Assembly (NCBI GenBank): GCA_965644495.1
Contig: CBFFSA010000001.1
Span: 3,844,001-3,908,000, forward strand
From: Perkinsela sp. CCAP 1560/9
Lineage: Eukaryota; Protista; Euglenozoa: Kinetoplastea
Reading direction: 5' to 3'
DNA: 64,000 nucleotides
Shown here piece after piece: positions 5,701-53,219 of the stretch (positions are counted from its first letter, which is position 1; each line of letters begins with the position of its first letter). The notes below the pieces were generated by a model, which saw only the letters and a program-made list of their open reading frames with translations, had not been told where the DNA came from and did not search any database. The position numbers and the translations under genes are program-made.

Positions 5701-7133
5701 CCTGAATCACACCACGCTCATTATCATCCCGCTGTTGAGCTGTATATTCGATTGCCGCAAGAAACCGCGCAAACAACCTTTACACACCCTGAAAAAACAA
5801 ATCTTCGTCCTCATGATGCATAAAAGGCAAAATTTGCAAGAAAATGCCTGACGCCAACAAGAGAATCAATTCCAGTTGTGTGCTTTAGGATATGTACAGT
5901 GGTGATCATCGTCTTTTACCCCCCCCCTACAGGTCTTGTATTTTCTTCCTTACTCGCGTCTCCGGAACCGCTGTTTCCCCTTCTTCTTTGGCGCCACTTT
6001 TCTCATTTTTTTCAGGGCGGAGTAACGGGAAGCAATTTCCAGTAGAAGCTTTCCGCTTATTTTTTTTTCATCGCATTTATTTTCTTGGATTAGTGCGACG
6101 TTGTCCAGCTTTTCCGTGTCCGGGATAGTTTCGCCAATGGCCGTTAGTGTCGCCTGTATAAAGTGCGTATCGTTATCCCAACTTGAATGCAGAGCTTTAA
6201 ACAGAGGCGTCCACTTTCGTTTTTCTAAGATCTTCAGTATGACGTTAGTTTTTCAGGACTTGATTTTCTCCTTCGATAGAGTTCATAACAAAAGCGTCCG
6301 TTACGGAGTCTGACATTGCAATTTCTACGTAATACAAAAGTGCGTCAAAAGCTTGTAGGGCAAGCGGCGCGAAACAAAATCGGTCCTTCGTTGTTGTTTT
6401 TTTAATATTCCTATACCTCGTAATATTCCTATACTCTTAAGTACCCTCTTAATATTCCTACCAGGAGTATTAACCCGAACAGTGGTTTAGTAGTAATATT
6501 CTTCAAATATTTACCATCATGCTACTTCCATTTCACCTTTCCGATATTGAACAGCACACGAAAGGACAACAAACGCAAACAAACGATATAAATTTAGAAC
6601 CAAAAGCACGTGACAAGGGACTAAGTTTTCGTCCTAGTAAGGTACGTGGAGCGAACTTACCACAGGAATATGAACTCGCACGATTGCTCGGAGACAATGA
6701 GAATTTGCCTACCACTTGGAGTACGTCAACGCCCGCGTGTGAATGGAAAGGCACCCATTGCAATACGGACGGATACGTCACAGGGCTTAATTGGGATTCT
6801 TTCAGTCTTACAGGCACTCTCCGATGGGATTGGCTACCTCGGTCAGTAGTCTTGTGTAATGTGATGAGAAATAAACTCACAGGACACATACATACTGAAA
6901 AATTGCCACCGCAACTTAGGTACTTGCTCTTATCCGTCAATAGATTTACGAATCAGGGAGATCTTACTTGCTTGCCTCTCTCACTGGAAGATTTTGTACT
7001 GGATGAAAATCACTGCCACGGAAATGTGGATTTGACACATTTGTCTCCCCGCTTGTCTAAGCTAAGCCTCCGCAGTAACTTTTTTTCTGGCGAAGTCAAT
7101 CTCACTGGCTTGCCGGCAAGCTTGACATACCTT

Positions 7134-10100
7134 GTCAGGTACCTTGTTGTACCTTGTTGATTTATTTTCCCCTACTTTTACGACCCTTCATGACCTCGCC
7201 ACATGCCAGAAGTGGGGAAATCTCACAGGCGTTGCAGGACTCTCATAAGAGACTAGGCAACGTAACTAGCCGATCCGCCACCTCTCTGACAGGTGCTGAA
7301 CGCGAGGCCAAGGAACATGCAGCTCAACATGCAAACTCCTACCGAGTCAGCTCCAAAGCTCCTATGAGAGGTTCACTGAAAACAAACACTGAAAAGAAGG
7401 AAACCGCAATAAATACGACCCGGCGATGTAAACATACTTGTAAGGAGAAAACAAAATGCGGCCATCCCTGCTGCAAGACTGCGCCGAATCCGCCGTCCAC
7501 TCAGCCCCTTAACATTTCACAATGCAAGCATCCCTGCAAAGACAAGAGTCTGTGCGGCCACCCATGTTGTAAACGACATCTTCTTCCTACCTGTGTTCCC
7601 GAAGATAGTACCACACATGTATCCCAAGGGAATACTGTTACCGATGTAACGAGGAGGACGGAAACAAACACAATGTCCTCTGAAGCCCCATCATCTGAAG
7701 GAGTAAAGGATGTACCTGAACCTATCGCCCCGTGCAAACATATCTGCAAGGATAAGGCGAATTGCGGGCACCCCTGTTGTAAACGTCACCTCCACACCAC
7801 TTGTACGAGCGCCGGTAGTGCACCTAGACTAGATCCACAAAGCAGTACGCGCGACAATGGGAGTCAAAATCTGGCAGGAGACTCTGGGGGCTTTATGGTG
7901 AAAGTACTGCGCCACTTGACCAAGCCCATATTTCAATGTGCGGGCAAACCCCAAACTGCGCAGAACTCCTCGAACACGGAAGTGTTTTCACCCAGCGGCA
8001 GATCCACAAGCGAGGGCTCCAACCACTACGAACGCTCAAGGAAACACGTCGAGGGAGAAATGTCGGCAAAGAGAAAATTGATTGCCCCAGGAATCGCAAG
8101 ATCAAACAGCGACAACCCTGCTACAACGCATGCCAACAGAGCTGATCAGCGTGAAGCAAGTAAGGTGCCCACCTTTCGGAAATCCCCTTCTTCTCCTCCG
8201 GAAGGAAAACAACATACTATCTCCTCAACAGCTATCAATCTTGCGTATGAATTATGTAAAGGCCTCCTTGGCATCCCTCCCCCGGAAGCACGAGCGAAAC
8301 CACCGCCTCTCAGAAAGATGACTCCCAAGACCGTAAACCGAGGGTCCCAACTATCTCCCAAGCGAGAACCTCCCGAATTCGCTATAGAAAAGCTGCAGGA
8401 AGGACCGACATTGCGCCTCAGCGCTCGACAGCCCGAACCAGAGCCTCAGAACCCATACAATCTACCATGTAAACATCCCTGTAAGGACAAAACCACGTGT
8501 GGCCACCTTTGCTGCAAAAGAGGGCTTACCCCTGGCATCACAACATCGTCACCCGCACGTATCTCTTCCTCTGATACCGAAAAGCACCCCCCAGACCGGA
8601 TAACTGATGAACCATATCGCGACCATCCCAGCAGCACGCCCGAGCACGACGCAGGGGTGGACACTTCCGACAACTCCAAAGCAGAGAAAGTCCCGTACCT
8701 CCCTGCCCCTTTATCGCCGCCACAGAATCTTTCGATAGTGCCGGAGTCCTGGAACGTCTCGTTCACGCCTAGTCCCACACGCCGCGGCGTAGAGAAACTA
8801 CTTATTAATCGTATAAAGTCACCCCACCATACCGACGACTCAGAAGGACTCTTGACAGAACCACCGTTCCCTCTCTGCACTGCGGACGACGAAGTTCCGG
8901 AATGGGTATTCGAGAAGGTCCCTCACGACGTGCCTTCTGGGAATTCGGGGGTCCCTGTAGAAAGACGTCGCTCGACAGAGAAAGGGAAACAATGCCTACA
9001 TTTTATACAATCCCGATCAAAGCCTCTGAAACTTCGCCTAGCAAGTGCCCAAGAATGGTTATATTTTCCGGACGTACGAGCTGCCTGCGAAAGTCAAATC
9101 ACACGCAGCAGGATTAGCTCCCTGCAGGGAGCGCAGGCAGCCATTTCGAAGGCGCTGAACTCTGGCAACCCCACGCACGACATCATAGTAAGAGGATGTT
9201 CCGTAGAAGAACTGATGGACCATGGGGCGTGCGATTTCATTACAATTCATAAAGTCGGAAGCCCGGACAAGTCTTCGCGCCACTCCAGTTGGGTATCTCT
9301 GTACCAGGATGCAGCCCTAAAACTTTCAGATTACTATTCCTCTCCGGGTACTCTCAGTAAAGCCGTTCTTAAGAGACTAAACGGCTCCGAAATTCCCGGG
9401 CTTGCAGATTATGTGATAACCCTACATCGACACACACCCATCGACGAAACTCCGCCGGTCTTAGAAGCTATTCCGGAGCTTCCAGCATATCGCATAGCAG
9501 ACCCACCCAGTCGTGTACCCTCTTTGCAATCCTTTGCACAACCCTGCCGCCACACCTGCCGCGACAAACTCGGGTGTGCTCATCGTTGCTGTAAAGTCTT
9601 CGGTCCCGCTGCTCCTCCAACTGCAGGTTCCACTGCCGCCGAGACCAGCTCTGCCCAGGAATCCAAAGTACCTCGCTCGGCGGTTCCACCAGACCTGCAG
9701 GAGTATAAAGAACAGGATCTCGATTACCTACTCCGAACAGCCAGGTACATCCAAGGGGGAAAGATATGTATCAACTTAACGGACGCACAGTGGCACGACG
9801 TTGAGACCAAGGCTCTCAAAAGGTGTGCATTACTCACTCCTGAACAAGACATAGATTCCGCCGTTAGGAACGCCGAACTCCTGAGCTCCATACTATCTGT
9901 CTCTACCTACGAGGTTGCTCGCGACGTGAATCCCACGAAAGGCTTTTTAATCCGCACAAAGAAAGGTCACGCAAAGACCCGATGCAGACCCTTGGAAAGC
10001 GAAAAAATAGCCTCGTCCTTCTCCCGGCACCTAAAAGAACTGCAGACAAAACTACGCTATACACATGGAAAGGCAGACAGGAACGCCTTAAAACGAACGA

Positions 10101-12763
10101 TCAAGGAAACCAAAAAAGGTGAAAGGGTTTATCATGCGGAGGCCACCGCACAGCGGCAAACACTCGAACAACGCCGGGCACTGAAACGCTTTAACAGAAA
10201 CCCATGGACCGCCGCTAGCGAAACATTGGACAAACCTATCGGTCTTGAAGCCCCAGCCTCCTATCCTACATGCGATGTGCACAGCGTGGAAAAGCACTTT
10301 GGTGATACACTTTCTGCTCCTTCAGAGGAATACCACATTCCTCCGTCTGACTCGCTTGGGACCCGTCCTCTTGTCGACATGTCATGGGAAGAGCTGACCC
10401 CGACCGAAATATCCGACGCTCTAATCTCGAAAAGGAATGGCAGTGCCCCAGGTCAAGACACCATCACATATACCATCCTAAAACGGTGTCACAGCGTACA
10501 CTCACACATCGCTACAGTCTTCAACGCGTTGCTCAAGTATCGCACTTGCCCACCTTCCTGGAAATGCTCTGTTACCCGCCTAATTCATAAAAATGGAGCT
10601 CACGATCAACCCCAAAACTGGCGCCCCATCAGTCTCATCAGTGTTCTAGCTAAGCTTCTCCATTCGATCATAAGTCGCAAAATAAACCGCCATCTGGTCG
10701 AGGCAGCAGTAATTGATCCATCAATCCAAAAGGGTTTCCTACCGGCCATCAACGGGACACTGGAACACACTCAGACGCTGGATGCAATCTTGCAGCACTA
10801 CAGAAAGAACAAGCTCCAATACTGCTTAGCCCAACTGGACCTATCCAACGCATTCGGTTCAGTCCCACACAATGTTATATTTGAGGCGATGCAATGGGCC
10901 AAGATCTCCCCGACTCTCCTCGGGTACATCAGTAGTTTATATAACGGAGCGTCTACGCAAATAAAGTGTTATGAAGGTCTCTCCTCTACAATTCCTGTGC
11001 AACGTGGGGTACTCCAAGGCGACACCCTCTCCCCGTCTATATTCCTTATCGTCATGGAAGTAGTACTGCGTTATATGACACTTAACTTTCCCGCGTACGG
11101 ACTCGATCTGCCAGGCAATGCGAAATGCTTTATAAAGGCCTACGCTGACGATCTCACTGTCCTCACCAGCAACCCGAAGGAGTCACAAATCGCACTTGGA
11201 GCCCTATCCTCAATCCTCCGCAAAATAGGTTTATCTATAAACGTGAAAAAGAGTAGGGTACAATGCATGGCCGTGCGACCGGACGATGAACACCCAGGTT
11301 ACATGACACGCCGTCCACAAATTCTGGTCAATCACATTCCCATTCCCCAAATCTGTGATGCAGGTAGCACCTTTCTGGGCATGACCATCGCCCCTGGAGC
11401 ACAACAGTCCCGTGCGCTGTTCATGAAGCTACGTCCTCTCATTAATTCATGGCTCAGAAATATCGATAAGAGCGCCCACGACCTCCCTTCGCGACTATGG
11501 ATATATCAGCATGCCATTATCTCCCGCTTGCGCTTCTCGCTTACGATCCACCCGTGCATCACTATGAACTTTGTCCTCCGACTCCAGAAACTCTGTACCA
11601 ACTTCCTGCGGCGTTGGATTAACGTGGCGCGTGGCTCTAGTCCCGAAGCAATTTATTCATCGCGCGGCTGGGGACTGAGGAGCCTGTCGCAACTGTGGCA
11701 TGAATGTACTGCAGACCTTATGTGCCAGTTAAAGAAATCCAAAGATCCGGCTGCCGCAGCTGTGCTTCGGAACAAAATACGGGAAGAAGAGGAGAGACGC
11801 TTGAAAGGACAAATACGGCCCGCAACTCACATAACGCACTGCTTGAACGACCGATCTCGCGCCAGGAAAACTCTCATTGACCTGAACGAGGAGCGTATGA
11901 TTAACGCTCTGCGACGCCGCACCACGGTTGCCATACAGTGGTGGGACACGAACACGGAGGAAGATCAGGCGAAAGATTTTGCAGCTGCCATTAACGGCCT
12001 TAGGAGCACTTCACTGAGCAGATTCGCTACACATGTGATGGTCCAAGCCCCACTTCCTACCCGGACCATGCTCAGAACATGGGGGAAGAATGGTGCAAAT
12101 AGTGTGTCTTGCCGTATCTGCAACTCAGCACCCGAAACCTTAAGGCACCTGCTCTCAGGTTGCAGGACATCCTTAGACCAAGGACGCTACACGTATCGAC
12201 ATGACAGAGTGTTGAGCGTCCTTGCGAACGCGATCGTCGGCTCCCCCAACACCTCCTGGGCCTCATTCGACCTCGAGGGCCTCCGTAACCTCCCAAGTTG
12301 GTGGGCAGACCTAGAAACCACTCTGCGTCCAGATGGCCTGGTCAGGCTTCACGATGGAACTGAATTTATCGTTGAACTGACCGTACCCTGGGAAGACAAC
12401 ATCGCGGAGGCACACTGCCGCAAAACGGAAAAATATCAGAATATATTGCATCGCCGCAGGATGGATCACCCGAACACACATCTGCTGTGTATGGAGGTGG
12501 GTGTAAGAGGATTGCCGGCTTCCTCTCTTCGGCAGGTAGCCCGCCTTTTTGGGAGTGACAAAGGGCTGTCCACGGAATGCCAACTTGAAGCCATACGCGA
12601 AGCAATTCGTAGTAGCTTTGTTATTTGGCTAAACCGGGAATCACCCGACTGGAAAGGGGGCGGCTAGGCTAGTAAAACAGCCTATGCGGGGTCGTCGTAT
12701 GCGACCGTAGCATAGGTAGAAATTTACCTCTGCAGATCTAAATATGATTCTGCATTGAATAAA
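7134..12763 (+). mobile_element. full-length non-LTR retrotransposon, R2 group (RT + restriction-like endonuclease; HERO/NeSL/R4-like C-terminus)
   Basis: Bounded by the two LRR halves; single long ORF; short structured 3' UTR ending TTGAATAAA; no obvious TSD. Confidence 0.9.
7190..12667 (+). CDS. retrotransposon polyprotein: 5 Cys/His fingers - RT - CCHC - PD-(D/E)xK endonuclease
   Basis: NWRPISL, QKGF, DLSNAFGSV, GVLQGDTLSP, YADD; CRIC..ETLRHLLSGC, YTYRHDRVL, RPDGLV, ELTVPWE, KTEKY, EVGVRG; first ATG at 7190. Confidence 0.95.
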   Translation: MTSPHARSGEISQALQDSHKRLGNVTSRSATSLTGAEREAKEHAAQHANSYRVSSKAPMRGSLKTNTEKKETAINTTRRCKHTCKEKTKCGHPCCKTAPNPPSTQPLNISQCKHPCKDKSLCGHPCCKRHLLPTCVPEDSTTHVSQGNTVTDVTRRTETNTMSSEAPSSEGVKDVPEPIAPCKHICKDKANCGHPCCKRHLHTTCTSAGSAPRLDPQSSTRDNGSQNLAGDSGGFMVKVLRHLTKPIFQCAGKPQTAQNSSNTEVFSPSGRSTSEGSNHYERSRKHVEGEMSAKRKLIAPGIARSNSDNPATTHANRADQREASKVPTFRKSPSSPPEGKQHTISSTAINLAYELCKGLLGIPPPEARAKPPPLRKMTPKTVNRGSQLSPKREPPEFAIEKLQEGPTLRLSARQPEPEPQNPYNLPCKHPCKDKTTCGHLCCKRGLTPGITTSSPARISSSDTEKHPPDRITDEPYRDHPSSTPEHDAGVDTSDNSKAEKVPYLPAPLSPPQNLSIVPESWNVSFTPSPTRRGVEKLLINRIKSPHHTDDSEGLLTEPPFPLCTADDEVPEWVFEKVPHDVPSGNSGVPVERRRSTEKGKQCLHFIQSRSKPLKLRLASAQEWLYFPDVRAACESQITRSRISSLQGAQAAISKALNSGNPTHDIIVRGCSVEELMDHGACDFITIHKVGSPDKSSRHSSWVSLYQDAALKLSDYYSSPGTLSKAVLKRLNGSEIPGLADYVITLHRHTPIDETPPVLEAIPELPAYRIADPPSRVPSLQSFAQPCRHTCRDKLGCAHRCCKVFGPAAPPTAGSTAAETSSAQESKVPRSAVPPDLQEYKEQDLDYLLRTARYIQGGKICINLTDAQWHDVETKALKRCALLTPEQDIDSAVRNAELLSSILSVSTYEVARDVNPTKGFLIRTKKGHAKTRCRPLESEKIASSFSRHLKELQTKLRYTHGKADRNALKRTIKETKKGERVYHAEATAQRQTLEQRRALKRFNRNPWTAASETLDKPIGLEAPASYPTCDVHSVEKHFGDTLSAPSEEYHIPPSDSLGTRPLVDMSWEELTPTEISDALISKRNGSAPGQDTITYTILKRCHSVHSHIATVFNALLKYRTCPPSWKCSVTRLIHKNGAHDQPQNWRPISLISVLAKLLHSIISRKINRHLVEAAVIDPSIQKGFLPAINGTLEHTQTLDAILQHYRKNKLQYCLAQLDLSNAFGSVPHNVIFEAMQWAKISPTLLGYISSLYNGASTQIKCYEGLSSTIPVQRGVLQGDTLSPSIFLIVMEVVLRYMTLNFPAYGLDLPGNAKCFIKAYADDLTVLTSNPKESQIALGALSSILRKIGLSINVKKSRVQCMAVRPDDEHPGYMTRRPQILVNHIPIPQICDAGSTFLGMTIAPGAQQSRALFMKLRPLINSWLRNIDKSAHDLPSRLWIYQHAIISRLRFSLTIHPCITMNFVLRLQKLCTNFLRRWINVARGSSPEAIYSSRGWGLRSLSQLWHECTADLMCQLKKSKDPAAAAVLRNKIREEEERRLKGQIRPATHITHCLNDRSRARKTLIDLNEERMINALRRRTTVAIQWWDTNTEEDQAKDFAAAINGLRSTSLSRFATHVMVQAPLPTRTMLRTWGKNGANSVSCRICNSAPETLRHLLSGCRTSLDQGRYTYRHDRVLSVLANAIVGSPNTSWASFDLEGLRNLPSWWADLETTLRPDGLVRLHDGTEFIVELTVPWEDNIAEAHCRKTEKYQNILHRRRMDHPNTHLLCMEVGVRGLPASSLRQVARLFGSDKGLSTECQLEAIREAIRSSFVIWLNRESPDWKGGG

Positions 12764-13164
12764 CACCTGTCGGGTAATAAATTTACAGGATCGCTCGAGT
12801 TGCAACATTTGCCACCTTCCTTAACGAAATTTTGTTGCCAAAACAATTGTTTCTCCGGATTCGTTGAATTCGGTCGGCTTCCTTGGAAATTAGATTCCCT
12901 GCGGATCTCCGACAACGCTGAACTCTATGGGGAAATACCTAAATCTCTTCTCTTGAACACGGATGTTCGCTTTGCGCATACCAAAGTACGTTTGAAGAAT
13001 CTGTGAAGTATATCAGCTGAAAGGAACACGTCTGAACAAAATTTACCACTTATATGAGTGTCAAATATCAATGGTAGATACAGTGTTTGATACAGGGTTC
13101 GAAAAACAAGATTTGTTTTTTCAAACAAGAGTTGAGCCAAATCAGTAATGTATTTATTCATTTA

Positions 13165-18426: not shown

Positions 18427-19944
18427 GTGGCCGCCCGAGATTACAAGGTCGAGGTAAGCACGGTACATAGAGTTTATCGGAAAAAAGAAGATTGGTATAA
18501 ATTTACTCAACTTGGCTTCGGGAAATTGTTTCAGTATCATCCCCCCCGAGCAAAGAAAGAATTATATGAAAAAGGGTTGACGCAACTGCTTTTGCTACGC
18601 GGGTCTCTTTCGGCAGTCACGAAACCGACAATGTTGGGGTACTTTGCTGAAATTTCAGAGCACTTCTGTTCCCTTACCGACAAAGGAAAAGAAAAATTTT
18701 GGATTCGTTTTTGCACCTTCGCCAATATTTCGCGACGAAGAGTCAATGGAGCAACCCAAATGGTCCCAAAAGACATGGACGAGCGTATAGAAGCCTTTTT
18801 GAATATGATAGCTCTGCGAAATTGTGATCGCGGAGGATACGCTGTAATTGTAACAGGGGACGAGACCTGTGTTGTGTGGGAGCCCGTCAATGAAATCACA
18901 TACGACACTGAAGGGACAAAGCGTGTAAAGGTTTTAACTACAGGTAAGGAGAAGAAGACACTGACTGCGTGGTTTTGGGGCCGCTCTGCTACGAACCAAC
19001 GGCATGCAGAAAGCACGTGGGAGCATAAGGTGTTTCCTCCGCACTTAATTTGGGAAGCCCATTCAGATTCTGGGAAGGTTTCCAAAGAGGTGCTCCGGGC
19101 GGCAGAAAAGTACAATTGTACGGCAACAACGACAACAAGCGAGTGGAACACAGGAGGGTCATTTAAAAAATGGGCTGAAGCGGAATTCTTTGACAGAATG
19201 AAGTATCCTCCGCGGAAGACACTTATTATTTTGGATCTGTACGCTGCTCATCGGACAGCGGAATTATTATTGTTCTTTCGTGAGAGAGAAATCGATGTTC
19301 AATTCGTTCCAGGAGGTTGCACTTCCAAAGGACAGCTCATGGATATGGCCATCAACCAGCCTTTTAAAAAGTACTACAAGGAATGTTTTGCCTCCTGGCG
19401 TGCGTCGACGCATCATGAAATTGTCCGGCCAACGCGAAGTCTTATAACAAAATTTGCCACCCAGGCTCTGGCAAAAGTGAATTCAGAAGAATACGAAATC
19501 GAATTTAATAAGTTGCTTGTTCCAGCACTTACCAAAAATCTCGCACAGATTCCCATAGAATCCAGAGCCGAGCTCAGCCTCTCCTCAAGCGTTATCACGG
19601 AATCGATGGTGGATGCATCAGCCATCGCTTCACGCGTATCACAACTGAGCATTGTCGAGGAATCTCTTGAACCAAATCAGGTCCCTCGTCTGCCAACGCG
19701 CGTTCCTGTAAAAAATCGAATTAGTCCCACAATCGCAGCGAAAGCCATGAAGTCCGCGATAGAGTCAGCGCGTAACAGGAACTCAGCGCTTAACGCAACC
19801 CCAGTACAGGAGTGTTGTTATTGCACGCGAGTGAATTTAACTCTACGGGAGTGTAGTGAACCTGGGTGTTTAACGAAATTTCATCACATGTGTGCAATTG
19901 AAGAAAAGGGGGAAGAGAATGACAATTTCTGCGCAAAGCATTAA
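18427..19944 (+). mobile_element. pogo-like (DDE_1, DD35D) transposase, probably frameshifted at the 5' A-run near 18380
   Basis: TGDET, GKEKKTLT, LIILDLYAAH..VPGGCTSKGQLMD; Cys/His-rich tail; CCCCCCTTACTTCACC subterminal repeats at 18016-18092. Confidence 0.85.
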
Positions 19945-20547: not shown

Positions 20548-21468
20548 CAATTCCTCCCCTTTTGATGCCTCAAAGTAACGTAAATATAAACGTGATGATG
20601 ATCGAGAGTCGTGTGCCACACGTAGCACCCCGCATTCCACGAGTTCTACTAAATGTTGTAACCAAACCCCGGAGGATAGTTTCCTTATTTTCCCGTGAAA
20701 AGGGGGACAATTTATCTATTCAATAAAATTTTGGGTACTTTTCAATGCCGTGCAACATTTGATACCCCATGGTAAACCATTGTTTAGGTGTGTTGATGTA
20801 AAGAATCCAAGTTGTTCCTTCAGTATTTATGATGAATCTTCGTTAACAAAGAATTCGGGTATAAATGCATCAAGAAAAGCAACCGTTTGCTTTTTTTTTC
20901 TAGTTTTCTTTTTTTTTCTCCACCGAATAAGCACTTACGCGTTCACTATCGTCGGTCTGAATTTCTGATTCAATATTCCTACTAGGCGAGATATCCTGAA
21001 AAGCCGTATTCCGAGCGTCAACCCGAGACGACCGGTGTGTGCCTCGACACTTCCATATGGGAGGATCTATAACGCACCAACAATACTCCCCCCCCCCTTT
21101 GTTTTCTCTCCCCCGAACACTCCATATTTTTCAACTTCAAATCTTCTTAGGGGGGAGGACTCCCGTTACCATGCCTCAAGTGAGGATTAAGGAACTATTT
21201 TTTTTTTCGGCAATCGTAGTGCCAGGCAATCCAAGGCGAGTTTACTACGCCGAGATAATGGGGAGTTGCTGTTCCCCTGAACATGATACCATGGACAGGG
21301 CATAGCAACTCCCTCATTATCACTCCTTCGTAAGCACCATGTTACCGGGACCAAGCCCTAGGTGCCAGGCATGCCATAGCACGTCACAACTTCCCACCCT
21401 CTCCCTTCTGTTTTTATTCTGTTTTCACTTCATTAAAAAAACATGCTGAAGAGGAGGATGTATAGCGC

Positions 21469-30699: not shown

Positions 30700-30971
30700 A
30701 CTGAGAAGAGAAAACGTGTATGGTTCCGGGCCTAAGAGCATCGTAGACCAGAAAGGAAGCAGTCCCACACCGAAAGAAAAATTTCGTATATTATAAAAAA
30801 AGTCACAAAAAATTATTTTGGGCCCCAAAAATCGTTATGTCAACTGTCCCCCCGGTATTTACTCCCAACTATTTTCTTGGAGCTTTGACGTGGTTAAATC
30901 ACGTGTTAAAAAACTGTGGTTCAGTAGTAGATAAAAAACTCTTTCCTTGCACATTTCTTATTTATCTATCC

Positions 30972-32310
30972 ATGAGGTTTTTGTATCGTGCGACAGATTC
31001 GGTGTCGGGCGTCTCACGTCCTGCCAAAGTCGGCGCACTTTCTTTACCAACAGAGTACCAGTTGATGCAACTTGTAAATGGCATTGAAAATCCTCATGCT
31101 ACGTGGAGCTCAGGTACACCCGCATGTGAATGGCGTGGTGTAAAATGTAATGAAGCAGGAAAGGTGGTTGATATTCGTTGGGATTCTATGGATCTCCGTG
31201 GGGTTTTTAATTGTGATCATTTATCCAGCGAATTAAAAGTGCTTATTGTTCATCGAAACGAACTGTCGGGAGAAGTTTCTTTTAATAATTTACCCGCTGA
31301 GTTGACCGCTCTTTACCTTGTTGGTACTTTTTTTTCCTAGCTCATCTTTTCTCTCCCGGAAACGGGCATATTTTTACACTGTCAATGCCCGTTTCCGGAT
31401 GGCGCTAGGAGAGGAACTGTCCCTCTTGTCGCAAAGTAGGGGTGCGCCTCCCTTCCCTCATCTCCCAGCACCCCGCTCGGAACACGGTTCCGAGTCCCCA
31501 TGCGCTGCAGGACCCTACTACGGGACCACGCGGCGTGCCTTCACTATCCGGCGACACCGGTACTTCTGCGCGTAGGAGGCTTCCATATACCGGAAGTCTC
31601 CCACACGGCGAGCAAACACGTTGTATGCGTGTTCTAGAGGATGTTCTATGCACCTCTCTTGCTCACCAGCCGTGGCGGATTCTGTGGGACCCCGATACCC
31701 ATGATGCTTCATGAACCATGACTCCATTTGCCAGCATGCATCCATGGCCCTGACCATGTTGTATCATGAACCATGGAAGTCATTTGTAGCATGTACGATG
31801 GGAATATCATCCGCGTCCCACAAATCCGTATATTTTTCCTGGCGCACTGCGCTTACAAAACATCTCGGGACATCTTATCCCGATGAGGCCTTCTCTTTTC
31901 GCTTTCCTGGGGAGGATATCCCGCGCTTTTCCCTGTGTTGCCTCGGAAGGCGAAAAGGTCCAGCAGGGAACGTTGATTGCGCTTACCCCTGCTCGACCTA
32001 ATTATCTCTACAGGTACTGCCCTGTATGAACAAACAACTTTGCATGAACCGATTCACCGGCCACCCTGATTTTCGTCATTTGCCGCAAAATTTGTGTGAA
32101 CTTCACATTGCCAATAATTATTTTGAAGGTCATGTAGTTCTAGATTCTCTTCCATCATCGCTAAATCTTTTGTATCTATCGTGGAATATGGAGCTAGAAG
32201 GAAAGCTGGTCGTGGGAGGGAATTTGGAATATTTAAGATATGACGTTCGCGGTACGAAAATTTCAGTGAGTGATGGTATCTTGTGGAACGATGAAGGTAA
32301 GTGGAAGTAA
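30972..32310 (+). pseudogene. LRR family gene split by a non-coding insertion (30972-31313 + 32035-32310)
   Basis: Removing 31314-32034 restores in-frame LPAELTAL^QLCMNRFTG. Confidence 0.88.
31314..32034 (+). mobile_element. 721-bp non-autonomous (SINE-like) retroelement, probable partner of the 7134-12763 LINE
   Basis: Starts TACCTTGTTG, ends with a hairpin then TGAACAAA, inserted at the same LRR position, no credible ORF. Confidence 0.7.
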
Positions 32311-39898: not shown

Positions 39899-41459
39899 CA
39901 GGGGGGGCCATGAAAACTGACTAGCTTCGCATTTTAGCCTCGTGAGGCCGTTTGAGCTAATTTTTGTTGCAAACGAGAGATCTCGTTCTGAATATCGTGT
40001 CTACGCTATTTAGAACTCGTTTGTATAAACCTGATATTTTGCATTTCGAAAATACTGAAATTTAAGACGATTTATTTTGCAAAAAGCATAAAAAATAGTA
40101 AAAAAGTTGGTTTTCTCTTCTTTTTTCTTCACTATGGGCAAGCGGCATAGATTAAACCGTCGCCAATTGTCCCCAGAGCAGTCTTCGTATTCCATACGCA
40201 TTGTTTGCGCACACGAAAGACATCGTGGTACAAGTATTGAAGACACGGCACGAATGATGAACTGTTCTGAGAGCTCTGTCTATCGGTACAAGGCACGTTT
40301 TGATGAGTCAGGTGACGTGGCACGTGCGAGCTACTCGCGCGATAATGCCGTTGATACGGAGGAATTCCGTGCTATGCTCTGTACCCTTGTTGATGATGAG
40401 AAAGACACGCCATTCGGGTGTCCGGGGTTTAAATGGGTACACAAGAGAGTGGACAAGACACTTTATCCTTGTAGTCTGAACATCGTAAAACGGAGTTTGA
40501 AAAGGATGGGATACGTCATTAAGACTATGTCACACAAACCTTTCTTAACTGCTGGGCACAAGGCTGCCCGATTACAACTTGTTGATTACTTCGATGGATG
40601 GAGTCCAGATCAGCTGTCCCGTGTGGTATGGTGTGACGAGAAGACTTTCCGATGTGGTTCACATGGGAAAAAAATCACATATCTTGCAAAAATCACTGAC
40701 CCCCCCAAGGAAACACCAGTAGAAATGGATAGGTGGTACGGGGGGAAGGGAGTGCATGTATTCATGGCAACCAGTCTGCGTTGGGAAGTACCCGATGCGT
40801 GTTTCCACGAGTTTTCCCAGAATGAAACCGTAACAAACGAAGTTTTTCTGAGAACAATGAAGAAGCGAAATGGGTTTTTTAACTGGATGCATCGGCGGCC
40901 GGGGGCTGCTGTTGTCCTTGACAATGCGCCAGGGCACGGGGCAGCCCGGAGAATAGGTAAGCTGGAAGGAATTAAAATTATTGACTGGCCTTCGAAATCT
41001 CCTGATCTCAATTTGATTGAGAATTTGTGGAGTATGATGGATAAGTACATCCACACCCATCTTCGTCCGAAAAATCGAACGGAATTGCAAGCTGCTATTC
41101 CTAAGGCGAAGGACTACGTGTTGGCAGAATGTCACGAGGCGTATGTGAACACGTTACAGAGTCCTCCCACACGCCTCGCTACTCTACGTGAGCGTGGAGG
41201 TGGGAATACTGGATATTAAGACTTAGTTTCTACCGCGAAAGGCCAAAAATTACTATTTTGCGCTCTTTTTTCAATTTGCAAAATCTCAAAAATTTCAGTT
41301 TTTCTACCCATGGGAAAGGCTTGCTTTCATCAGTTTTTGTACTCTAAATAGCGTAGACACGATATTCAGAACGAGATCTCTCGTTTGCAACAAAAATTAG
41401 CTCAAACGGCCTCACGAGGCTAAAATGCGAAGCTAGTCAGTTTTCGTGCCCCCCCCCTG
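39899..41459 (+). mobile_element. intact Tc1-like transposon with ~115-bp near-perfect TIRs and TA TSD
   Basis: CAG-G-run-CCATGAAAACTGACTAGC.. / ..GCTAGTCAGTTTTCGTG-C-run-TG. Confidence 0.95.
40134..41219 (+). CDS. Tc1-like transposase (DD32E)
   Basis: HTH region, WCDEKTF, DNAPGH, WPSKSPDLNLIENLW, GGNTGY. Confidence 0.95.
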   Translation: MGKRHRLNRRQLSPEQSSYSIRIVCAHERHRGTSIEDTARMMNCSESSVYRYKARFDESGDVARASYSRDNAVDTEEFRAMLCTLVDDEKDTPFGCPGFKWVHKRVDKTLYPCSLNIVKRSLKRMGYVIKTMSHKPFLTAGHKAARLQLVDYFDGWSPDQLSRVVWCDEKTFRCGSHGKKITYLAKITDPPKETPVEMDRWYGGKGVHVFMATSLRWEVPDACFHEFSQNETVTNEVFLRTMKKRNGFFNWMHRRPGAAVVLDNAPGHGAARRIGKLEGIKIIDWPSKSPDLNLIENLWSMMDKYIHTHLRPKNRTELQAAIPKAKDYVLAECHEAYVNTLQSPPTRLATLRERGGGNTGY

Positions 41460-44126: not shown

Positions 44127-45612
44127 TCAATAACCAGAATGTCCTCCATTGTTTTGCAGTACTTTTCGAAGCCTATTCGGAACCGAATCAATGGAGTTTA
44201 ACACTTTTTGTTTCTCAGGGGATCGTTTTAGAAAGGAAAAAGCTTTTTTAATGGCTTGTGCAAGGGTGGCGTGATCGTGAGGCTTAATTTTGTTTTTTAT
44301 AATTTTATCCATTTGTCCCCAAACATTTTCAATAGGATTTAGATCAGGCGAGTTTGGCGGCCAAGATAGAAATTTTATATTATTTCTTCTTAATTCGGCC
44401 TTCGCCATATTGTGGGTCGTGGCGTTGTCCATTTGGACCGTGACATCCCTCAAATGATTTTTGAGGTAAGCTAAAAAGCCGTTCGGTTTTTGAAACGCCT
44501 CAAGAATCACTTCCCCAGAGACCTTGTGTGTGTTATCATAACTTGTGCGGTCATTAGGCTCAAAAACATGCAAAAAAAAGCCATGCTGAACGCTTATTCC
44601 CATCCAGGCCATCACGCCCTTTCCCCCATACCATCTCCGGTTTCTCCGGCGAGGTTTTCTTGGACCCCCTTTTTTTGTAATGTAAAACTGAGAACCGTGG
44701 ACCCCACAGGTAAACAACTTCTCATCTGTCCAAATAATTTTATTCAAATCATCTTTTGGCCATAAAAGCAATTCATTTGCCAGCCGCAGGCGCTGCAATT
44801 TGTGATCTTCTGTTAGGTCACAATTAGGCCCTTTGGCCAATCTGCCATAATTTTTTGCTCTTAAAATAGACTTAACCTTACTTAAGGAACATTCATATCC
44901 CATATTTAAAACCTGTTCATGTACCCAACTATACGTCAGGCACCCATCTTCTTTTTCATTTTCTTCATCCACAATGTCTTTTAAAAGTGAGGTGAAACGT
45001 CGTGAAGGTTTCTTTTTACCCGGCGCTTTTTAAGGTGAAAGATCTTCACCTTCTCTCCATTTTTTTATGAAACGGCTTATTGTACGGCGAGCGCGTCCAA
45101 AGTTTTTCGCGAGCCGATGAACACTTATACCATTCTTGTATTGTTTTATTATTTCGAGACGCTCTGAAAGAGACACTTCTATAGTGCCTTTGTGCGATAT
45201 TGGGGGGGTAGTTTTGCCTATTATCTTTCCACCCTTCTACATATTCACCACTTTTAGGGTTAGTCGGTCTTGTATTCATGTTGTTGAGGTTTGAAAAACT
45301 CTATTAAATAGCTATTGATGTTTCTACAGAAACATTGCTTGAGCATAAAGAAATTAGAAGACTATTTAAGCTTACACACATTCAAATAAACCACAAAAAC
45401 ATGAAATTATCGGGAAAAAATGGTTGTGTACACAGAACACGTCCAAAAAACAGTGTTTTTTGGACCCAGGGGGCACCAGGGGGTCTCTATAAAAAAAGGC
45501 GGCAAAGCTCTTCGCTAGGGGAACGAGATCTCTTCAATGCTGCAAAGATGAGCAAAAACGGATAAAAAAATTAAAATTTCCCAGGAGGGGGCAAGATCAA
45601 CAACCGCCCCTG
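44127..45612 (-). mobile_element. Tc1-like element with disrupted transposase (DD32E)
   Basis: ORFs 45046-45279 and 44127-44972: WTDEKLF, RWYGGKGV, DNATTH, WPPNSPDLNPIENVW; one TIR-like end at 45612. Confidence 0.85.
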
Positions 45613-51816: not shown

Positions 51817-52091
51817 AGGATAAAAGGGGAAGGGGAAGGAAGGGGGAAGAAGAAGAAATGTGTAAAAGGAAAGAGGAGAAGAAAATTTGGGGAAAGATAA
51901 AAGGTTTGTGTTCCAATGTTGTGTGGGAAATGCAAGAGGCACTCTATATTGTATTCTTAAAGTAAGTAACATAATGTACAATGTGTCAAAGTGTCGTTAC
52001 GAAATGAGAAGTCGTTGGAATGAACACTCCTACTAAAGTTGTTACTCTATCCATCAAACAAAATCTTTTTTATTTCCTTCTTATTCCACCA

Positions 52092-53219
52092 ATGGGCCTA
52101 CTCGAAAAGAAACGTGACATTGAGGAAGAAATCGCTCGCACACAGAAAAATAAAAAGACAGAACACCACCTCGGTCGACTCAAGGGCAAACTTGCGCAAA
52201 TCAAAACACAAATTCTTGAGGCCTCTTCCAAATCCAAGGCCACCGGGGACGGCTTCGATGTGCGGAAAAGCGGGGACGTGCGGGTCGCCCTTGTCGGGTT
52301 TCCCTCCGTCGGCAAAAGCTCGTTTCTGGGAAAATTCACCACCACCCAAAGCGCCACCGCGGCCTACGAGTTCACCACACTCACCTGCATCCCGGGCATC
52401 CTGGAATACAAAGGCACAGAGATTCAAATCCTGGATCTCCCCGGAATTCTCGAGGGCGCCTCCGAGGGCAAGGGCCGGGGGCGGCAAGTGATTGCCACCG
52501 CCCGCACCGCCGATCTCATCCTGCTCATGATGGATGCGGAGAAGGCAGAGGTCCAGCGTCGGCTGCTGACGGCCGAGCTCGAGAGCGTCGGGCTTCGTCT
52601 CAACTGCGCGCCTCCAAAAATTTCGTTGAAAAAAAAGCCCAGCGGTACGCGAAATTTAATTTCCTACAGCTGTACCTGTGGGCCGCTGACCCGCGGGCTC
52701 TCGGAGAGGCTCGTATGTGAGTTACTCCGGGAGTACAAAATCCACAACGCGGAGGTGGTGATTCGCGAGGACTGCCCCGTGGAGGGTTTAATTGATGTGC
52801 TCGAGGGCAACCGACGGTACGTCCCCGCGCTCCATGTGTACAATAAAATCGACAACGTGTGTATGGAGGAAATTGACCGCCTGGCACGTCTCCCGCATAG
52901 TGTGGTGATGTCGTTGGCGTGGGAGCTGAATTTTGAGGCCGTGCGACGGGGGTTGTGGGAACATCTCGGGCTGGTGCGGGTGTATACCCGGCGACGAGGG
53001 GAGGCGATGCCGGATTTTGAAAAACCGTTTATTTTGGAATCCTCGGAGAGGAAAGAGGCCAGGGTGAGCCGGGTGTGTGATCGCATCCATAAGGATATGG
53101 TGGACAAGTTTAAGTACGCCGTGGTGTGGGGCACGAGTTGTCGTTACCAACCGCAGCGCGTCGGGCTGCGTCATGCTCTCGAGGATGAGGATGTGATTAT
53201 GATTGTAAGTGCGGGGTAA
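52092..53219 (+). CDS. developmentally regulated GTP-binding protein (DRG/Rbg, OBG family, TGS domain)
   Basis: ARTQKNKKTEHHLG, GFPSVGKS, YEFTTLTCIPG, DLPG, NKID, LEDEDV. Confidence 0.95.
   Translation: MGLLEKKRDIEEEIARTQKNKKTEHHLGRLKGKLAQIKTQILEASSKSKATGDGFDVRKSGDVRVALVGFPSVGKSSFLGKFTTTQSATAAYEFTTLTCIPGILEYKGTEIQILDLPGILEGASEGKGRGRQVIATARTADLILLMMDAEKAEVQRRLLTAELESVGLRLNCAPPKISLKKKPSGTRNLISYSCTCGPLTRGLSERLVCELLREYKIHNAEVVIREDCPVEGLIDVLEGNRRYVPALHVYNKIDNVCMEEIDRLARLPHSVVMSLAWELNFEAVRRGLWEHLGLVRVYTRRRGEAMPDFEKPFILESSERKEARVSRVCDRIHKDMVDKFKYAVVWGTSCRYQPQRVGLRHALEDEDVIMIVSAG

What the first reader, a model, noticed from the sequence alone, without database searches (positions are those of the whole stretch)
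7134..12763. Site-specific retrotransposon that appears to target LRR protein-coding repeats
Seen: an intact RT-RLE element splits one LRR gene at TTG CCG GCA AGC TTG ACA TAC CTT^CAC CTG TCG GGT AAT AAA TTT ACA GGA. A different element (31314-32034) splits a divergent paralog at TTA CCC GCT GAG TTG ACC GCT CTT^CAA CTT TGC ATG AAC CGA TTC ACC GGC. Both read SGEVxxxxLPAxLTxL^xLxxNxFTGxxxxxHLP. Both are in the same orientation and in the third-from-last repeat, and excision restores the frame with no clear TSD (junctions ambiguous by a few nt). Known: R2-group RLE elements target multicopy, near-invariant sequences (rDNA, spliced-leader exons, snRNA, tRNA, microsatellites). Inference: this lineage uses a large redundant protein-coding family as its safe haven and reads a degenerate, codon-constrained site. 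It could also drive turnover or truncation in the LRR repertoire. Only two insertion events support this.
Basis: partly seen in the sequence, partly recalled or inferred. Interest (0 to 1): 0.92.

Follow-up and report, generated by a model that had tools for sequence, protein, structure and literature searches.

The report
Retrotransposons that home into LRR repeats
A family of R2-like jumping genes in a small kinetoplastid genome inserts again and again at one exact spot of the leucine-rich-repeat unit of a gene family with more than 1300 members. This is a kind of target, a protein-coding repeat, not described for this class of element.

Summary
Window 7135-12763 is an intact R2-like non-LTR retrotransposon with one 1837-aa ORF carrying RT, a CCHC knuckle and a restriction-like endonuclease (RLE). 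It splits an LRR gene between repeat codons 4 and 6. Window 31314-32034 is a non-coding deletion derivative of a sister subfamily, sitting at the same phase of a paralog.

Genome-wide (21 Mb), I scored 62 independent 3' junctions from about 16 subfamilies whose RT-RLE regions are 38-100% identical. Eighteen lie in sense-strand LRR repeats, against 3.6% expected. Sixteen of those fall within one 5-nt register (P about 1e-27). Upstream flanks end at codon 4.

The preference is real and ancestral to the family, but it is not exclusive. About two thirds of copies lie elsewhere, and their flanks carry no LRR-like signal.

New points:
- The host is a kinetoplastid.
- The shared 5' 'TACCTTGTTG' is the 3' end of the spliced-leader exon, so the transposed RNAs carry the spliced leader.
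- The CAC/CAA after the 3' end belongs to the element, so codon 5 is replaced rather than restored.
- A 3' hairpin that covaries between subfamilies is shared by autonomous and non-autonomous members.

The closest precedents are CRE/SLACS (spliced-leader genes) and the trypanosome RHS/ingi hot spot. Other first-stage notes on this genome mention similar elements. I rate it a new variant of a known kind.

The parts
6519..7134 (+). 5' part of the interrupted LRR gene: an N-terminal cap with the W..C.W.G..C motif, then LRR repeats. It ends at codon 4 (CTT) of a 23-aa repeat.
   Evidence: (weak LRRNT_2 match). The translation ends ...SGEVNLTGLPASLTYL.
7135..7139 (+). Extra nucleotides at the 5' junction (GTCAG), between LRR codon 4 and the spliced-leader remnant. 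They are either untemplated or come from template jumping.
   Evidence: Variable extra nucleotides sit at the same place in other copies.
7140..7159 (+). Two tandem copies of TACCTTGTTG, the last 10 nt of the spliced-leader (SL) exon. This is the 5'-truncated SL head of the element.
   Evidence: 3 matches in the window, 0.16 expected. The SL RNA gene reads ...CAGTTTCTGTACCTTGTTG|GTATGAGAAGC in L096.
7135..12766 (+). Element 1: a full-length autonomous RT-RLE (R2-like) non-LTR retrotransposon. Its 3' end includes the subfamily-specific CAC at 12764-12766.
   Evidence: Two further full-length 99%-identical copies lie on contigs C2 and C4.
7154..12667 (+). Single open reading frame of 1837 aa. 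The first ATG is at 7190.
7427..9601 (+). N-terminal region with five copies of a Cys/His motif, C.H.C.(D/E)K..C.H.CCK, at aa 92, 124, 194, 439 and 798. It is the presumed DNA-recognition module.
   Evidence: The motif is also present three times in the sister subfamily whose RT-RLE region is 68% identical (L088). There is no Pfam match.
10583..11266 (+). Reverse transcriptase domain. The YADD active site is at 11141-11152.
12110..12163 (+). CCHC zinc knuckle (CRICNSAPETLRHLLSGC) upstream of the endonuclease.
   Evidence: (zf-RVT).
12326..12436 (+). Restriction-like endonuclease core: RPD...VELTV...KTEKY (PD-(D/E)xK type).
   Evidence: (aligned to the R2Bm RLE).
12727..12763 (+). 3'-terminal hairpin (TGCAGA...TCTGCA) between the conserved CTCT and TGAATAAA. 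It is the presumed RT recognition signal.
   Evidence: the same architecture in 21 of 21 subfamily representatives, with at least 7 different stem sequences.
12767..13006 (+). 3' part of the interrupted LRR gene. It resumes at codon 6 (CTG) of the same repeat, followed by two more repeats and the stop codon.
30837..31313 (+). 5' part of the second interrupted LRR gene. It ends at codon 4 (CTT).
31314..32037 (+). Element 2: a 724-nt non-autonomous member. It consists of a 10-nt SL remnant, a structured 5' UTR (perfect hairpin at 31355-31398), a 3' hairpin (32004-32034) and a CAA tail.
   Evidence: The genome holds at least 30 copies.
32038..32310 (+). 3' part of the second LRR gene. It resumes at codon 6 (CTT).

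Best explanation
This is a diversified family of R2-like non-LTR retrotransposons in a kinetoplastid genome. Each autonomous member encodes one ORF with RT, a CCHC knuckle and a C-terminal restriction-like endonuclease. The integration machinery prefers one position of the 23-aa LRR coding unit (L1xxL4xL6SxN9xF11SG13...L20P21).

Proposed mechanism:
1. The protein recognises the LRR-coding DNA. This most likely happens through the half-site downstream of the nick, where the invariant nucleotides are NTN..AAY..TTY..GGN..NTN GAY YTN..YTN CCN.
2. It nicks the antisense strand at the codon 5/6 boundary.
3. It primes cDNA on an RNA that ends in a conserved hairpin plus a short A-rich tail.
4. It cuts the sense strand 3 bp upstream, after codon 4. 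Codon 5 is therefore lost and replaced by the element's own terminal trinucleotide.
5. The RNA copied carries the spliced-leader exon at its 5' end. New copies therefore start with an SL that is truncated to a variable extent.

Non-autonomous members such as element 2 share the SL head, the 5' UTR and the 3' hairpin, and are mobilised in trans.

A second, non-LRR mode of insertion accounts for roughly two thirds of copies.

Shown: the anatomy, the insertion positions, the statistics, the SL identity and the hairpin covariation. Inferred: which strand is nicked first, recognition through the downstream half-site, the role of the N-terminal Cys/His repeats, and trans-splicing as the source of the SL.
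For: Enrichment and phase:
- Of 62 independent 3' junctions, 18 have a sense-strand LRR flank above the 99.9% null score. Only 3.6% of random window positions do (P=4e-12).
- 16 of the 18 sit at LRR register 12-16 out of 69 possible registers, whereas random LRR positions are spread uniformly. Overall P=1e-27, and P=8e-17 within the LRR-positive set.
- The 18 host flanks all differ in sequence, so these are independent events.
- Hits occur in about 13 of 16 subfamilies whose RT-RLE regions are 38-100% identical.

Upstream flanks:
- They end at codon 4 in L001, L017, L019, L025-L027, L086, L087, L091, L092 and L094.

Tandem arrays:
- Arrays end in an in-phase LRR, and in L118 two consecutive repeats are each hit after codon 4.
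- A second element lands between an older element's 3' end and codon 6. This argues that the downstream half-site is sufficient.

Target profile:
- Targeted repeats have the same nucleotide profile as background repeats, so the generic LRR consensus is what is read.

Protein:
- The RT-RLE region aligns with R2Bm at E=1e-36, including the CCHC knuckle and the RLE.
- The nearest named atlas cluster is 'type-2 retrotransposable element'.

Spliced leader:
- The SL RNA gene in L096 reads ...AACGATAAAGATACAGTTTCTGTACCTTGTTG|GTATGAGAAGC.
- Element bodies begin immediately after ...CCTTGTTG.
- 14 5'-truncated copies (13 independent) lack any SL.

3' hairpin:
- It is present in 21 of 21 subfamily representatives, with covarying stems.
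Against: - Most copies, about 42 of 62, are not in LRRs. Their downstream flanks score no better than random against an LRR nucleotide matrix. The machinery is therefore either relaxed or has a second entry route.
- In element 1's own young subfamily, only the window copy is in an LRR.
The pre-insertion sequence, and hence the 3-bp loss, is inferred from repeat periodicity only.
- No biochemical evidence exists for nick order or for the DNA-binding domain.
- It is unexplained how an SL-headed DNA copy, which lacks an AG acceptor at the SL/body junction, regenerates SL-headed RNA.
- The LRR background frequency of 3.6% comes from this window, not from the whole genome. Even assuming 20%, P is still 6e-16.
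Confidence: 0.85

Rival explanations
1. The elements are strictly LRR-specific. The non-LRR copies are secondary products such as rearrangements, insertions into decayed LRR pseudogenes, or nested insertions.
For: - Some weak or irregular LRR flanks were missed by the objective score (L071, L081, L052, L037, L039).
- Some non-LRR flanks are other repeats or other elements.
- Copies with a non-LRR flank on one side, such as L035 with its 5' flank in an LRR, do exist.
Against: - Full-length and 5'-truncated copies exist with both flanks non-LRR (L018, L020, L021, L023).
- The 39 non-LRR flanks show no residual LRR nucleotide signal (Mann-Whitney P=0.8-0.96).
- Young 99%-identical element-1 copies are mostly outside LRRs. 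Their flanks have had too little time to decay.
Confidence: 0.06
2. The insertion is not targeted. It is near random, and selection keeps only copies in a redundant gene family, or gene duplication and gene conversion among LRR paralogs spread a few original insertions.
For: - The LRR family is huge, with at least 1341 first-look candidates, and is likely dispensable gene by gene.
- One pair of loci, L078 and L079, is indeed a segmental duplicate.
Against: - Selection cannot produce single-codon phase precision or the strand bias.
- The host flanks of the 18 in-phase copies are all different, while the elements within a subfamily are 98-100% identical. Each is therefore a separate recent event.
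Confidence: 0.02
3. The true target is the spliced-leader sequence, as for CRE/SLACS/CZAR. On this reading the SL at the 5' end is target DNA, or a target duplication, that happens to lie in LRR genes.
For: - The hosts are kinetoplastids, whose known RLE elements target SL genes (PMC12278014).
- SL sequence directly precedes every full-length copy.
Against: - 5'-truncated copies never have SL upstream (0 of 14 listed, 13 independent).
- No SL or SL-intron sequence follows the 3' ends.
- The SL head is truncated at variable points directly against LRR codon 4.
- The bona fide SL genes seen in L096 are uninterrupted.
Confidence: 0.03
4. Phase specificity comes from nucleic-acid homology rather than from protein-DNA recognition. 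Read-through transcripts carrying LRR sequence, or the element's own termini, anneal to conserved LRR nucleotides and guide priming or recombination.
For: - In a polycistronic genome the elements are probably co-transcribed with their LRR hosts.
- The 3' tails (TGAAYAAA) loosely resemble the AAY-containing codons downstream.
- Microhomology (TACCTT) is visible at the 5' junction of the window copy.
Against: - Junctions are exact at the element tail, with at most 3 nt that could be carried over. No parental LRR sequence is transduced.
- Tails differ widely between subfamilies ((AAAT)n, (ATC)n, ATTAAA, CAA), yet the insertion point is the same.
Confidence: 0.04

Closest known systems
R2 (28S rDNA-specific RLE non-LTR retrotransposon; R2Bm structures 8gh6 and 8ibw)
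   Same: - A single ORF with N-terminal Cys/His motifs, RT, a CCHC knuckle and a C-terminal PD-(D/E)xK endonuclease, alignable end to end at E=1e-36.
- A structured 3' end and no long poly(A).
- A small target deletion instead of a duplication.
- Variable 5' junctions with extra nucleotides.
- 5'-truncated copies.
   Different: - The target is a degenerate protein-coding repeat with more than 10,000 potential sites, not a near-invariant rRNA site.
- Specificity is partial, at about 30%.
- The 5' end is a spliced-leader exon rather than a ribozyme-processed end. There is no Rfam match.
- The N-terminal motif C.H.C.DK..C.H.CCK is repeated five times, and no Myb domain was detected.
CRE clade (CRE1/2, SLACS, CZAR) of trypanosomatids
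   Same: - Kinetoplastid hosts.
- RT plus RLE and zinc-finger-like motifs.
- Target-specific insertion into a multicopy sequence.
- An intimate link with the spliced leader (PMC12278014).
   Different: - CRE elements insert at a fixed position inside SL RNA genes, end in poly(A) and make target duplications.
- Here the SL is carried at the element's own 5' end.
- The preferred target is an LRR codon boundary.
- Tails are hairpin plus a short A-rich, (AAAT)n or (ATC)n stretch.
- No duplication is seen.
- Clade membership by RT phylogeny could not be tested.
RHS (retrotransposon hot spot) genes with ingi/RIME or L1Tc in Trypanosoma
   Same: A large protein-coding multigene family carries a fixed hot spot where retroelements insert. 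This gives pseudogenes split into two halves (PMC7563717, citing Bringaud et al. 2002).
   Different: - Those elements are APE-type LINEs with a short sequence preference and target duplications.
- The hot spot there is one site per gene, not a site repeated in every unit of a tandem protein repeat.
- The gene family is a different one.
NeSL / Utopia / R4-Dong (other target-specific RLE lineages)
   Same: They are RLE elements that use multicopy 'safe havens'. Known targets are rRNA genes, SL exons, tRNA and snRNA genes, transposons, microsatellites and telomeres (PMC4640811). Weakly specific members exist, and here too two copies sit in a (TG)n microsatellite.
   Different: None of the listed target classes is a protein-coding repeat.
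Relict spliced leaders in dinoflagellate retrogenes (recalled from memory: Slamovits and Keeling 2008)
   Same: Genomic copies begin with spliced-leader sequence, sometimes with tandem truncated relicts. This implies reverse transcription of trans-spliced RNA.
   Different: There the copies are cellular genes. Here they are autonomous and non-autonomous retrotransposons in a kinetoplastid.

Membership tests
RLE-bearing (R2-group, 'early-branching') non-LTR retrotransposons | Reverse transcriptase of the LINE type | tested here: met
   RVT_1 at E=2e-30. YADD at 11141-11152. Aligned with the R2Bm RT.
RLE-bearing (R2-group, 'early-branching') non-LTR retrotransposons | A C-terminal CCHC motif followed by a PD-(D/E)xK restriction-like endonuclease, and no APE domain | tested here: met
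   CRIC...H....C at 12110-12163. RPD / VELTV / KTEKY at 12326-12436, aligned to the R2Bm RLE. No APE/Exo_endo_phos match in Pfam.
RLE-bearing (R2-group, 'early-branching') non-LTR retrotransposons | 5'-truncated copies and absence of LTRs or TIRs, the signature of target-primed reverse transcription | tested here: met
   Many 5'-truncated copies share the 3' end.
R2 clade sensu stricto | Insertion at the conserved 28S rDNA site | tested here: not met
   No junction lies in rDNA. Rfam finds no rRNA in the window or in the six loci scanned. Flanks are LRR or other sequences.
R2 clade sensu stricto | Placement inside the R2 clade in an RT phylogeny | not testable with these tools
   No labelled reference set (Repbase) is available. 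Only the PDB R2 proteins could be compared.
CRE clade (CRE/SLACS/CZAR) | Insertion at a fixed position inside spliced-leader RNA genes | tested here: not met
   The SL is the element's own 5' head. The SL genes in L096 and L116 are uninterrupted.
CRE clade (CRE/SLACS/CZAR) | Poly(A) 3' end and target-site duplication | tested here: not met
   The 3' ends are a hairpin plus a short tail specific to the subfamily. No duplication is seen, and about 3 bp is lost.
CRE clade (CRE/SLACS/CZAR) | RT phylogeny with CRE references | not testable with these tools
   No CRE, SLACS or CZAR sequence could be retrieved. None appeared among the 120 listed hits.
Target-specific non-LTR retrotransposons (functional class) | Independent insertions at the same nucleotide position of a repeated target, in one orientation | tested here: met
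   16 of 62 junctions fall in a 5-nt register of the LRR unit, all in sense orientation. Upstream flanks end at codon 4.
Target-specific non-LTR retrotransposons (functional class) | The large majority of copies sit in the target (strict specificity) | tested here: not met
   About 30% of copies are in LRRs. The rest show no LRR signal.

The most novel reading that the evidence does not exclude
An R2-like integration machinery has evolved to read the degenerate, amino-acid-constrained nucleotide pattern of a protein repeat: NTN..AAY..TTY..GGN...YTN CCN, in phase.

A kinetoplastid's LRR gene family of more than 1300 members, with more than 10,000 repeat units, thereby serves as its landing pad.

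The elements also depend on host trans-splicing. They are copied as spliced-leader-headed RNAs, which would replace the ribozyme or promoter solutions used by R2 and CRE.

This would be the first RLE lineage whose safe haven is a protein-coding repeat, and it would act as a built-in mutagen and recombination substrate for a probable surface or recognition gene repertoire.
Probability: 0.6. Interest if true: 0.85.

Novelty: new variant of a known kind. Interest (0 to 1): 0.8.

Why it matters
Target class. Known targets of target-specific LINEs are non-coding or RNA-gene repeats: rDNA, SL exons, snRNA and tRNA genes, microsatellites, telomeres and other transposons (PMC4640811). A lineage that homes to a fixed codon boundary of a protein repeat shows that this machinery can be tuned to a spaced, degenerate motif of about 20 bits. 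That bears on how R2-type proteins read DNA, and on current efforts to retarget them for gene insertion.

Host biology. The elements break LRR genes at a defined place, pile up in tandem, and hit neighbouring repeats. This is a ready mechanism for truncation, pseudogenisation and unequal recombination in the organism's largest gene family.

Spliced leader. The SL head ties retrotransposition to trans-splicing in an early-branching kinetoplastid. It offers a plausible intermediate between free-roaming RLE elements and the SL-gene specialists (CRE/SLACS) of trypanosomatids.

Tried and rejected
- Intron or 'introner' reading. The 5' GT and the 3' CTGCAG looked like splice sites, and splicing would leave an in-frame 33 nt in element 1. 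I rejected this. The CTGCAG is one arm of a covarying 3' hairpin, the frame does not hold for element 2, and the host is a kinetoplastid.
- Target-site duplication. A 10/11 similarity between the 5' junction and the downstream flank of element 1 would imply an irregular 21-aa repeat, and nothing similar is seen at other copies. I treated it as chance or template jumping.
- Known RNA families. Rfam found no ribozyme or other family in the window at the gathering threshold, or in six loci at E up to 1.
- Short shared motif in non-LRR flanks. An LRR nucleotide matrix gave no enrichment.
- 5' UTR of element 2 as SL-RNA intron. Rejected: the true intron starts GTATGAGAAGC, whereas element 2 continues GTACTTTT.
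- LRR genes as SL-headed retrocopies. The window contains no other SL remnant.
- Link between the most divergent RT copy and the SL array 2 kb away. The SL genes there are intact, and I did not pursue it.
- Earlier notes. The first call to the search of earlier findings failed, and the second worked.
- Clade placement. Named hits gave only generic 'R2-type / reverse transcriptase' labels.
- One mis-framed query was corrected.
Full report
**1. What is at the coordinates**

Window 7135-12763 holds one long ORF (7154-12667, 1837 aa).

- It carries an RVT_1 domain and a zf-RVT-like knuckle.
- From the RT to the C-terminus it aligns with the Bombyx R2 protein (8gh6, residues 388-1032, E=1e-36). The alignment covers the CCHC motif and the PD..E..K restriction-like endonuclease.
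- The N-terminal 900 aa have no Pfam match. They contain five copies of a Cys/His motif, C.H.C.DK..C.H.CCK, which also occurs in a sister subfamily.

The element splits an LRR gene. The upstream part (6519-7134) ends ...LPASLTYL, and the downstream part continues HLSGNKFTG... to a stop at 13006.

The second element (31314-32034) has no long ORF and splits a paralog at ...LPAELTAL^QLCMNRFTG.

**2. The host genome and the LRR family**

The assembly is 21.0 Mb in 110 contigs.

A conserved DRG GTPase in the window (52020-53216) identifies the host.
- It is 70% identical to a transcript of strain PhF-6 and 66% identical to one of PhM-4. Both strains are free-living prokinetoplastids (PMC7859406).
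- It is 61-64% identical to Trypanosoma, Leishmania and Bodo proteins.
- The host is therefore a kinetoplastid, probably near the Prokinetoplastina.

The LRR genes are about 300 aa long. They have a plant-like N-terminal cap and 23-aa repeats with the consensus L1xxL4xL6SxN9xF11SG13xLDLxxL20P21xS. A genome search gave at least 1341 first-look candidates.

In this window, 3.6% of random strand-specific positions lie in a sense LRR, and the repeat register of those positions is uniform.

**3. Genome-wide test of the targeting claim**

The RT-RLE protein matches at least 60 places in the genome at 38-100% identity, many with intact ORFs of 1500-1800 aa. Element 2 has at least 30 copies.

I collected 3' junctions from three sources:
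- element 1's subfamily (L001-L009);
- the element-2 family (L017-L046);
- 37 autonomous copies (L049-L085).

Junctions were defined by where 95-100%-identical siblings stop aligning. Each downstream flank was then scored against a position-specific matrix of the repeat, in all 69 registers.

Results:
- 18 of 62 independent junctions exceed the 99.9% null score.
- Their registers are 12 (ten times), 13, 14 (twice), 15, 16 (twice), 7 and 21.
- That is 16 of 18 within a 5-nt window, and all in sense orientation.
- The probabilities are 4e-12 for the enrichment alone and 1e-27 for enrichment plus register. Even if LRRs filled 20% of the genome, P is 6e-16.
- Two more junctions (L071, L081) are in irregular or decayed repeats at the same place.
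- The 18 host flanks all differ, whereas elements within a subfamily are 98-100% identical. These are therefore separate events.
- About 13 of 16 subfamilies have at least one such insertion.

Upstream flanks end at repeat codon 4 in the window copies, in L019 and L025-L027, and in five of eight autonomous copies whose 5' ends I fetched. In two more they end at codon 2-3.

Tandem arrays fit the same rule:
- L117 and L118 each consist of an autonomous element followed by a non-autonomous element, and both end in an in-phase LRR.
- In L118 the very next repeat is hit again after its codon 4.

**4. Where exactly is the break**

The 3 nt after the A-rich tail are specific to the subfamily and also occur at non-LRR insertions.
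- They are CAC in 5 of the 7 near-identical element-1 copies.
- They are CAA in 8 of 8 young element-2 copies.
- They are ACC in a third group.

Q, H and T are rare at repeat position 5. These nucleotides therefore belong to the element.

Host DNA stops after codon 4 and resumes at codon 6, so about 3 bp is lost. This resembles the small deletion made by R2. The frame is kept only because the element's tail happens to supply three nucleotides.

No target duplication is seen. The 5' junctions carry variable extra nucleotides.

**5. The 5' end is the spliced leader**

All full-length copies, across all subfamilies, begin with variants of GATAAAGATACAGTTTCTGTACCTTGTTG. The core CAGTTTCTGTAC is the hallmark of kinetoplastid spliced leaders (from my own knowledge).

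The genome contains a tandem pair of SL RNA genes (L096, C1:661000-661800). They read ...AACTTTAACGATAAAGATACAGTTTCTGTACCTTGTTG|GTATGAGAAGCTTCG..., with the canonical intron start.

Three observations show that the SL is part of the transposed RNA:
- In the elements, the sequence shared with the SL gene stops exactly at the exon's last base. After that the subfamilies diverge.
- The SL head is truncated at variable points directly against LRR codon 4. In L025 the head is almost complete, many copies start at about nt 10-12 of the exon, and both window copies start at nt 29.
- 14 5'-truncated copies (13 independent) have no SL at all upstream.

The SL is therefore the 5' end of the RNA that is copied. 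It is not a target and not a duplication.

The SL 32-mer occurs about 397 times in the genome, often after poly(A) runs. Other SL-headed retroposon families therefore exist as well.

How an SL-headed DNA copy regenerates SL-headed RNA is unresolved. Short tandem SL relicts, such as 7140-7159, hint at repeated rounds of trans-splicing and retroposition.

**6. The 3' end**

All 21 subfamily representatives fold into the same terminal module: (A)TCTCT, then a hairpin, then ATGA, then a short tail.

The inner stems differ and compensate. Examples are TGCAGG/CCTGCA, TACAGG/CCTGTA, TGTAGAA/TTCTACA, CTATT/AATAG, GCCTT/AAGGT, GCACT/AGTGT and ATCTT/AAGAT.

This is good evidence for a conserved RNA structure, presumably the RT's entry site. 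Element 2 has the same module, which explains its mobilisation in trans.

**7. What is recognised**

Targeted repeats have the same nucleotide profile as 191 background repeats. What can be read is therefore the generic in-phase pattern NTN(6)..AAY(9)..TTY(11)..GGN(13)..NTN GAY YTN..YTN CCN(20-21).

In tandem arrays a second element lands between an older element's tail and codon 6. I therefore infer that the downstream half-site is sufficient, as for the downstream-binding N-terminal domain of Bombyx R2. The Cys/His repeats are the obvious candidate reader. This step is inference.

**8. The other two thirds**

The 39 non-LRR flanks score no better than random against the LRR nucleotide matrix. 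Some recurrent contexts appear:
- the termini of a DNA transposon with 114-nt TIRs (L018, L028, L002);
- a (TG)n microsatellite hit twice (L119);
- other repeats.

There is thus a second, non-LRR entry route or a relaxed specificity. For the young element-1 subfamily, only the window copy is in an LRR.

The alternative criteria, 'random phases' and 'no enrichment', are firmly rejected. The fair verdict is a strong preference, not strict specificity.

**9. Comparison with what is known**

- By architecture the elements are members of the RLE-bearing, R2-group LINEs.
- They fail the defining target feature of R2 (28S rDNA).
- They fail the defining features of the CRE clade: insertion inside SL genes, poly(A) tails and target duplications (PMC12278014).
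- Clade placement by RT phylogeny could not be done without reference sequences.
[quoted passage not shown] A literature search for LRR-targeting found nothing.
- The nearest conceptual precedent is the RHS family of trypanosomes. It has a fixed hot spot for the APE-type ingi/RIME elements (PMC7563717).

**10. Earlier notes of this scan**

After I had identified the SL, a look-up showed that other first-stage readers had flagged similar things elsewhere in this genome. Their notes mention SL-headed elements in LRR genes, an invariant SL-like 28-mer, and 'CRE-clade' elements with an SL exon. All are unchecked AI notes.

My tests agree with them on the SL head and the LRR association. They contradict the reading that the SL is the insertion target. 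They leave the 'CRE-clade' label untested.

**11. Limits**

- The LRR background comes from one window.
- Only about 60 of the copies were examined.
Empty sites, expression and RNA ends were therefore not examined.

Noticed in passing
L096 (G000:C1:661000-661800, minus strand); also L114: Bona fide spliced-leader RNA genes: two copies in a 297-nt tandem, plus a solo copy. The exon ends ...CAGTTTCTGTACCTTGTTG and the intron starts GTATGAGAAGC. Very few SL genes were seen for a kinetoplastid, so the array may be collapsed in the assembly.
   Followed up: partly
genome-wide; examples L097-L115: There are about 397 dispersed copies of the SL 32-mer. Most head sequences other than the RLE family, and many are directly preceded by poly(A) runs. 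This suggests other SL-headed, poly(A)-tailed retroposon families arranged head to tail. Some show partial SL duplications (L101, L111).
   Followed up: partly
window 21192-21316; L018 119-1489: A DNA transposon family with 114-nt terminal inverted repeats. Non-autonomous copies are 1.1-1.6 kb and probable autonomous ones about 5.6 kb, with at least 40 ends in the genome. In three loci, retrotransposon ends abut its termini (L018, L028, L002).
   Followed up: partly
window 18427-19941, 40107-41216 (+) and 44127-44969 (-): ORFs with DDE transposase domains (DDE_1; DDE_3 with HTH). DNA transposons are interspersed with the LRR genes.
   Followed up: no
L119 (G000:C1:3069460-3076460): Two elements of the family lie in the same (TG)n microsatellite, each followed by (TG)n. 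This may be a secondary microsatellite preference, as in other RLE lineages.
   Followed up: no
L118 about 700-850 (G000:C10:473000-473150): Two consecutive LRR repeats of one gene are each occupied. An element ends before codon 6, and the next element starts after codon 4 of the following repeat.
   Followed up: yes
L060 (G000:C51:13385-14145): One copy with an (AAAT)n tail is followed by a tRNA-like sequence containing GGTTCGATTCC. The same sequence also occurs in L040, so it may be a tRNA-derived repeat.
   Followed up: no
L116 (G000:C1:663750-665564): The most divergent RT-RLE copy (38% identity) lies about 2 kb from the SL RNA gene pair, on the opposite strand. It may be a more CRE-like relative.
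   Followed up: partly
window 31355-31398: A perfect 14-bp hairpin (CCGGAAACGGGCAT...ATGCCCGTTTCCGG) in the 5' UTR of element 2. It is conserved in the 5' UTRs of several autonomous subfamilies (L051, L057, L058, L093). Its function is unknown and it has no Rfam match.
   Followed up: no
window 52020-53219: A DRG-type GTPase gene (MMR_HSR1 + TGS domains), used here as a taxonomic marker. Its best named matches are prokinetoplastid transcriptomes.
   Followed up: yes
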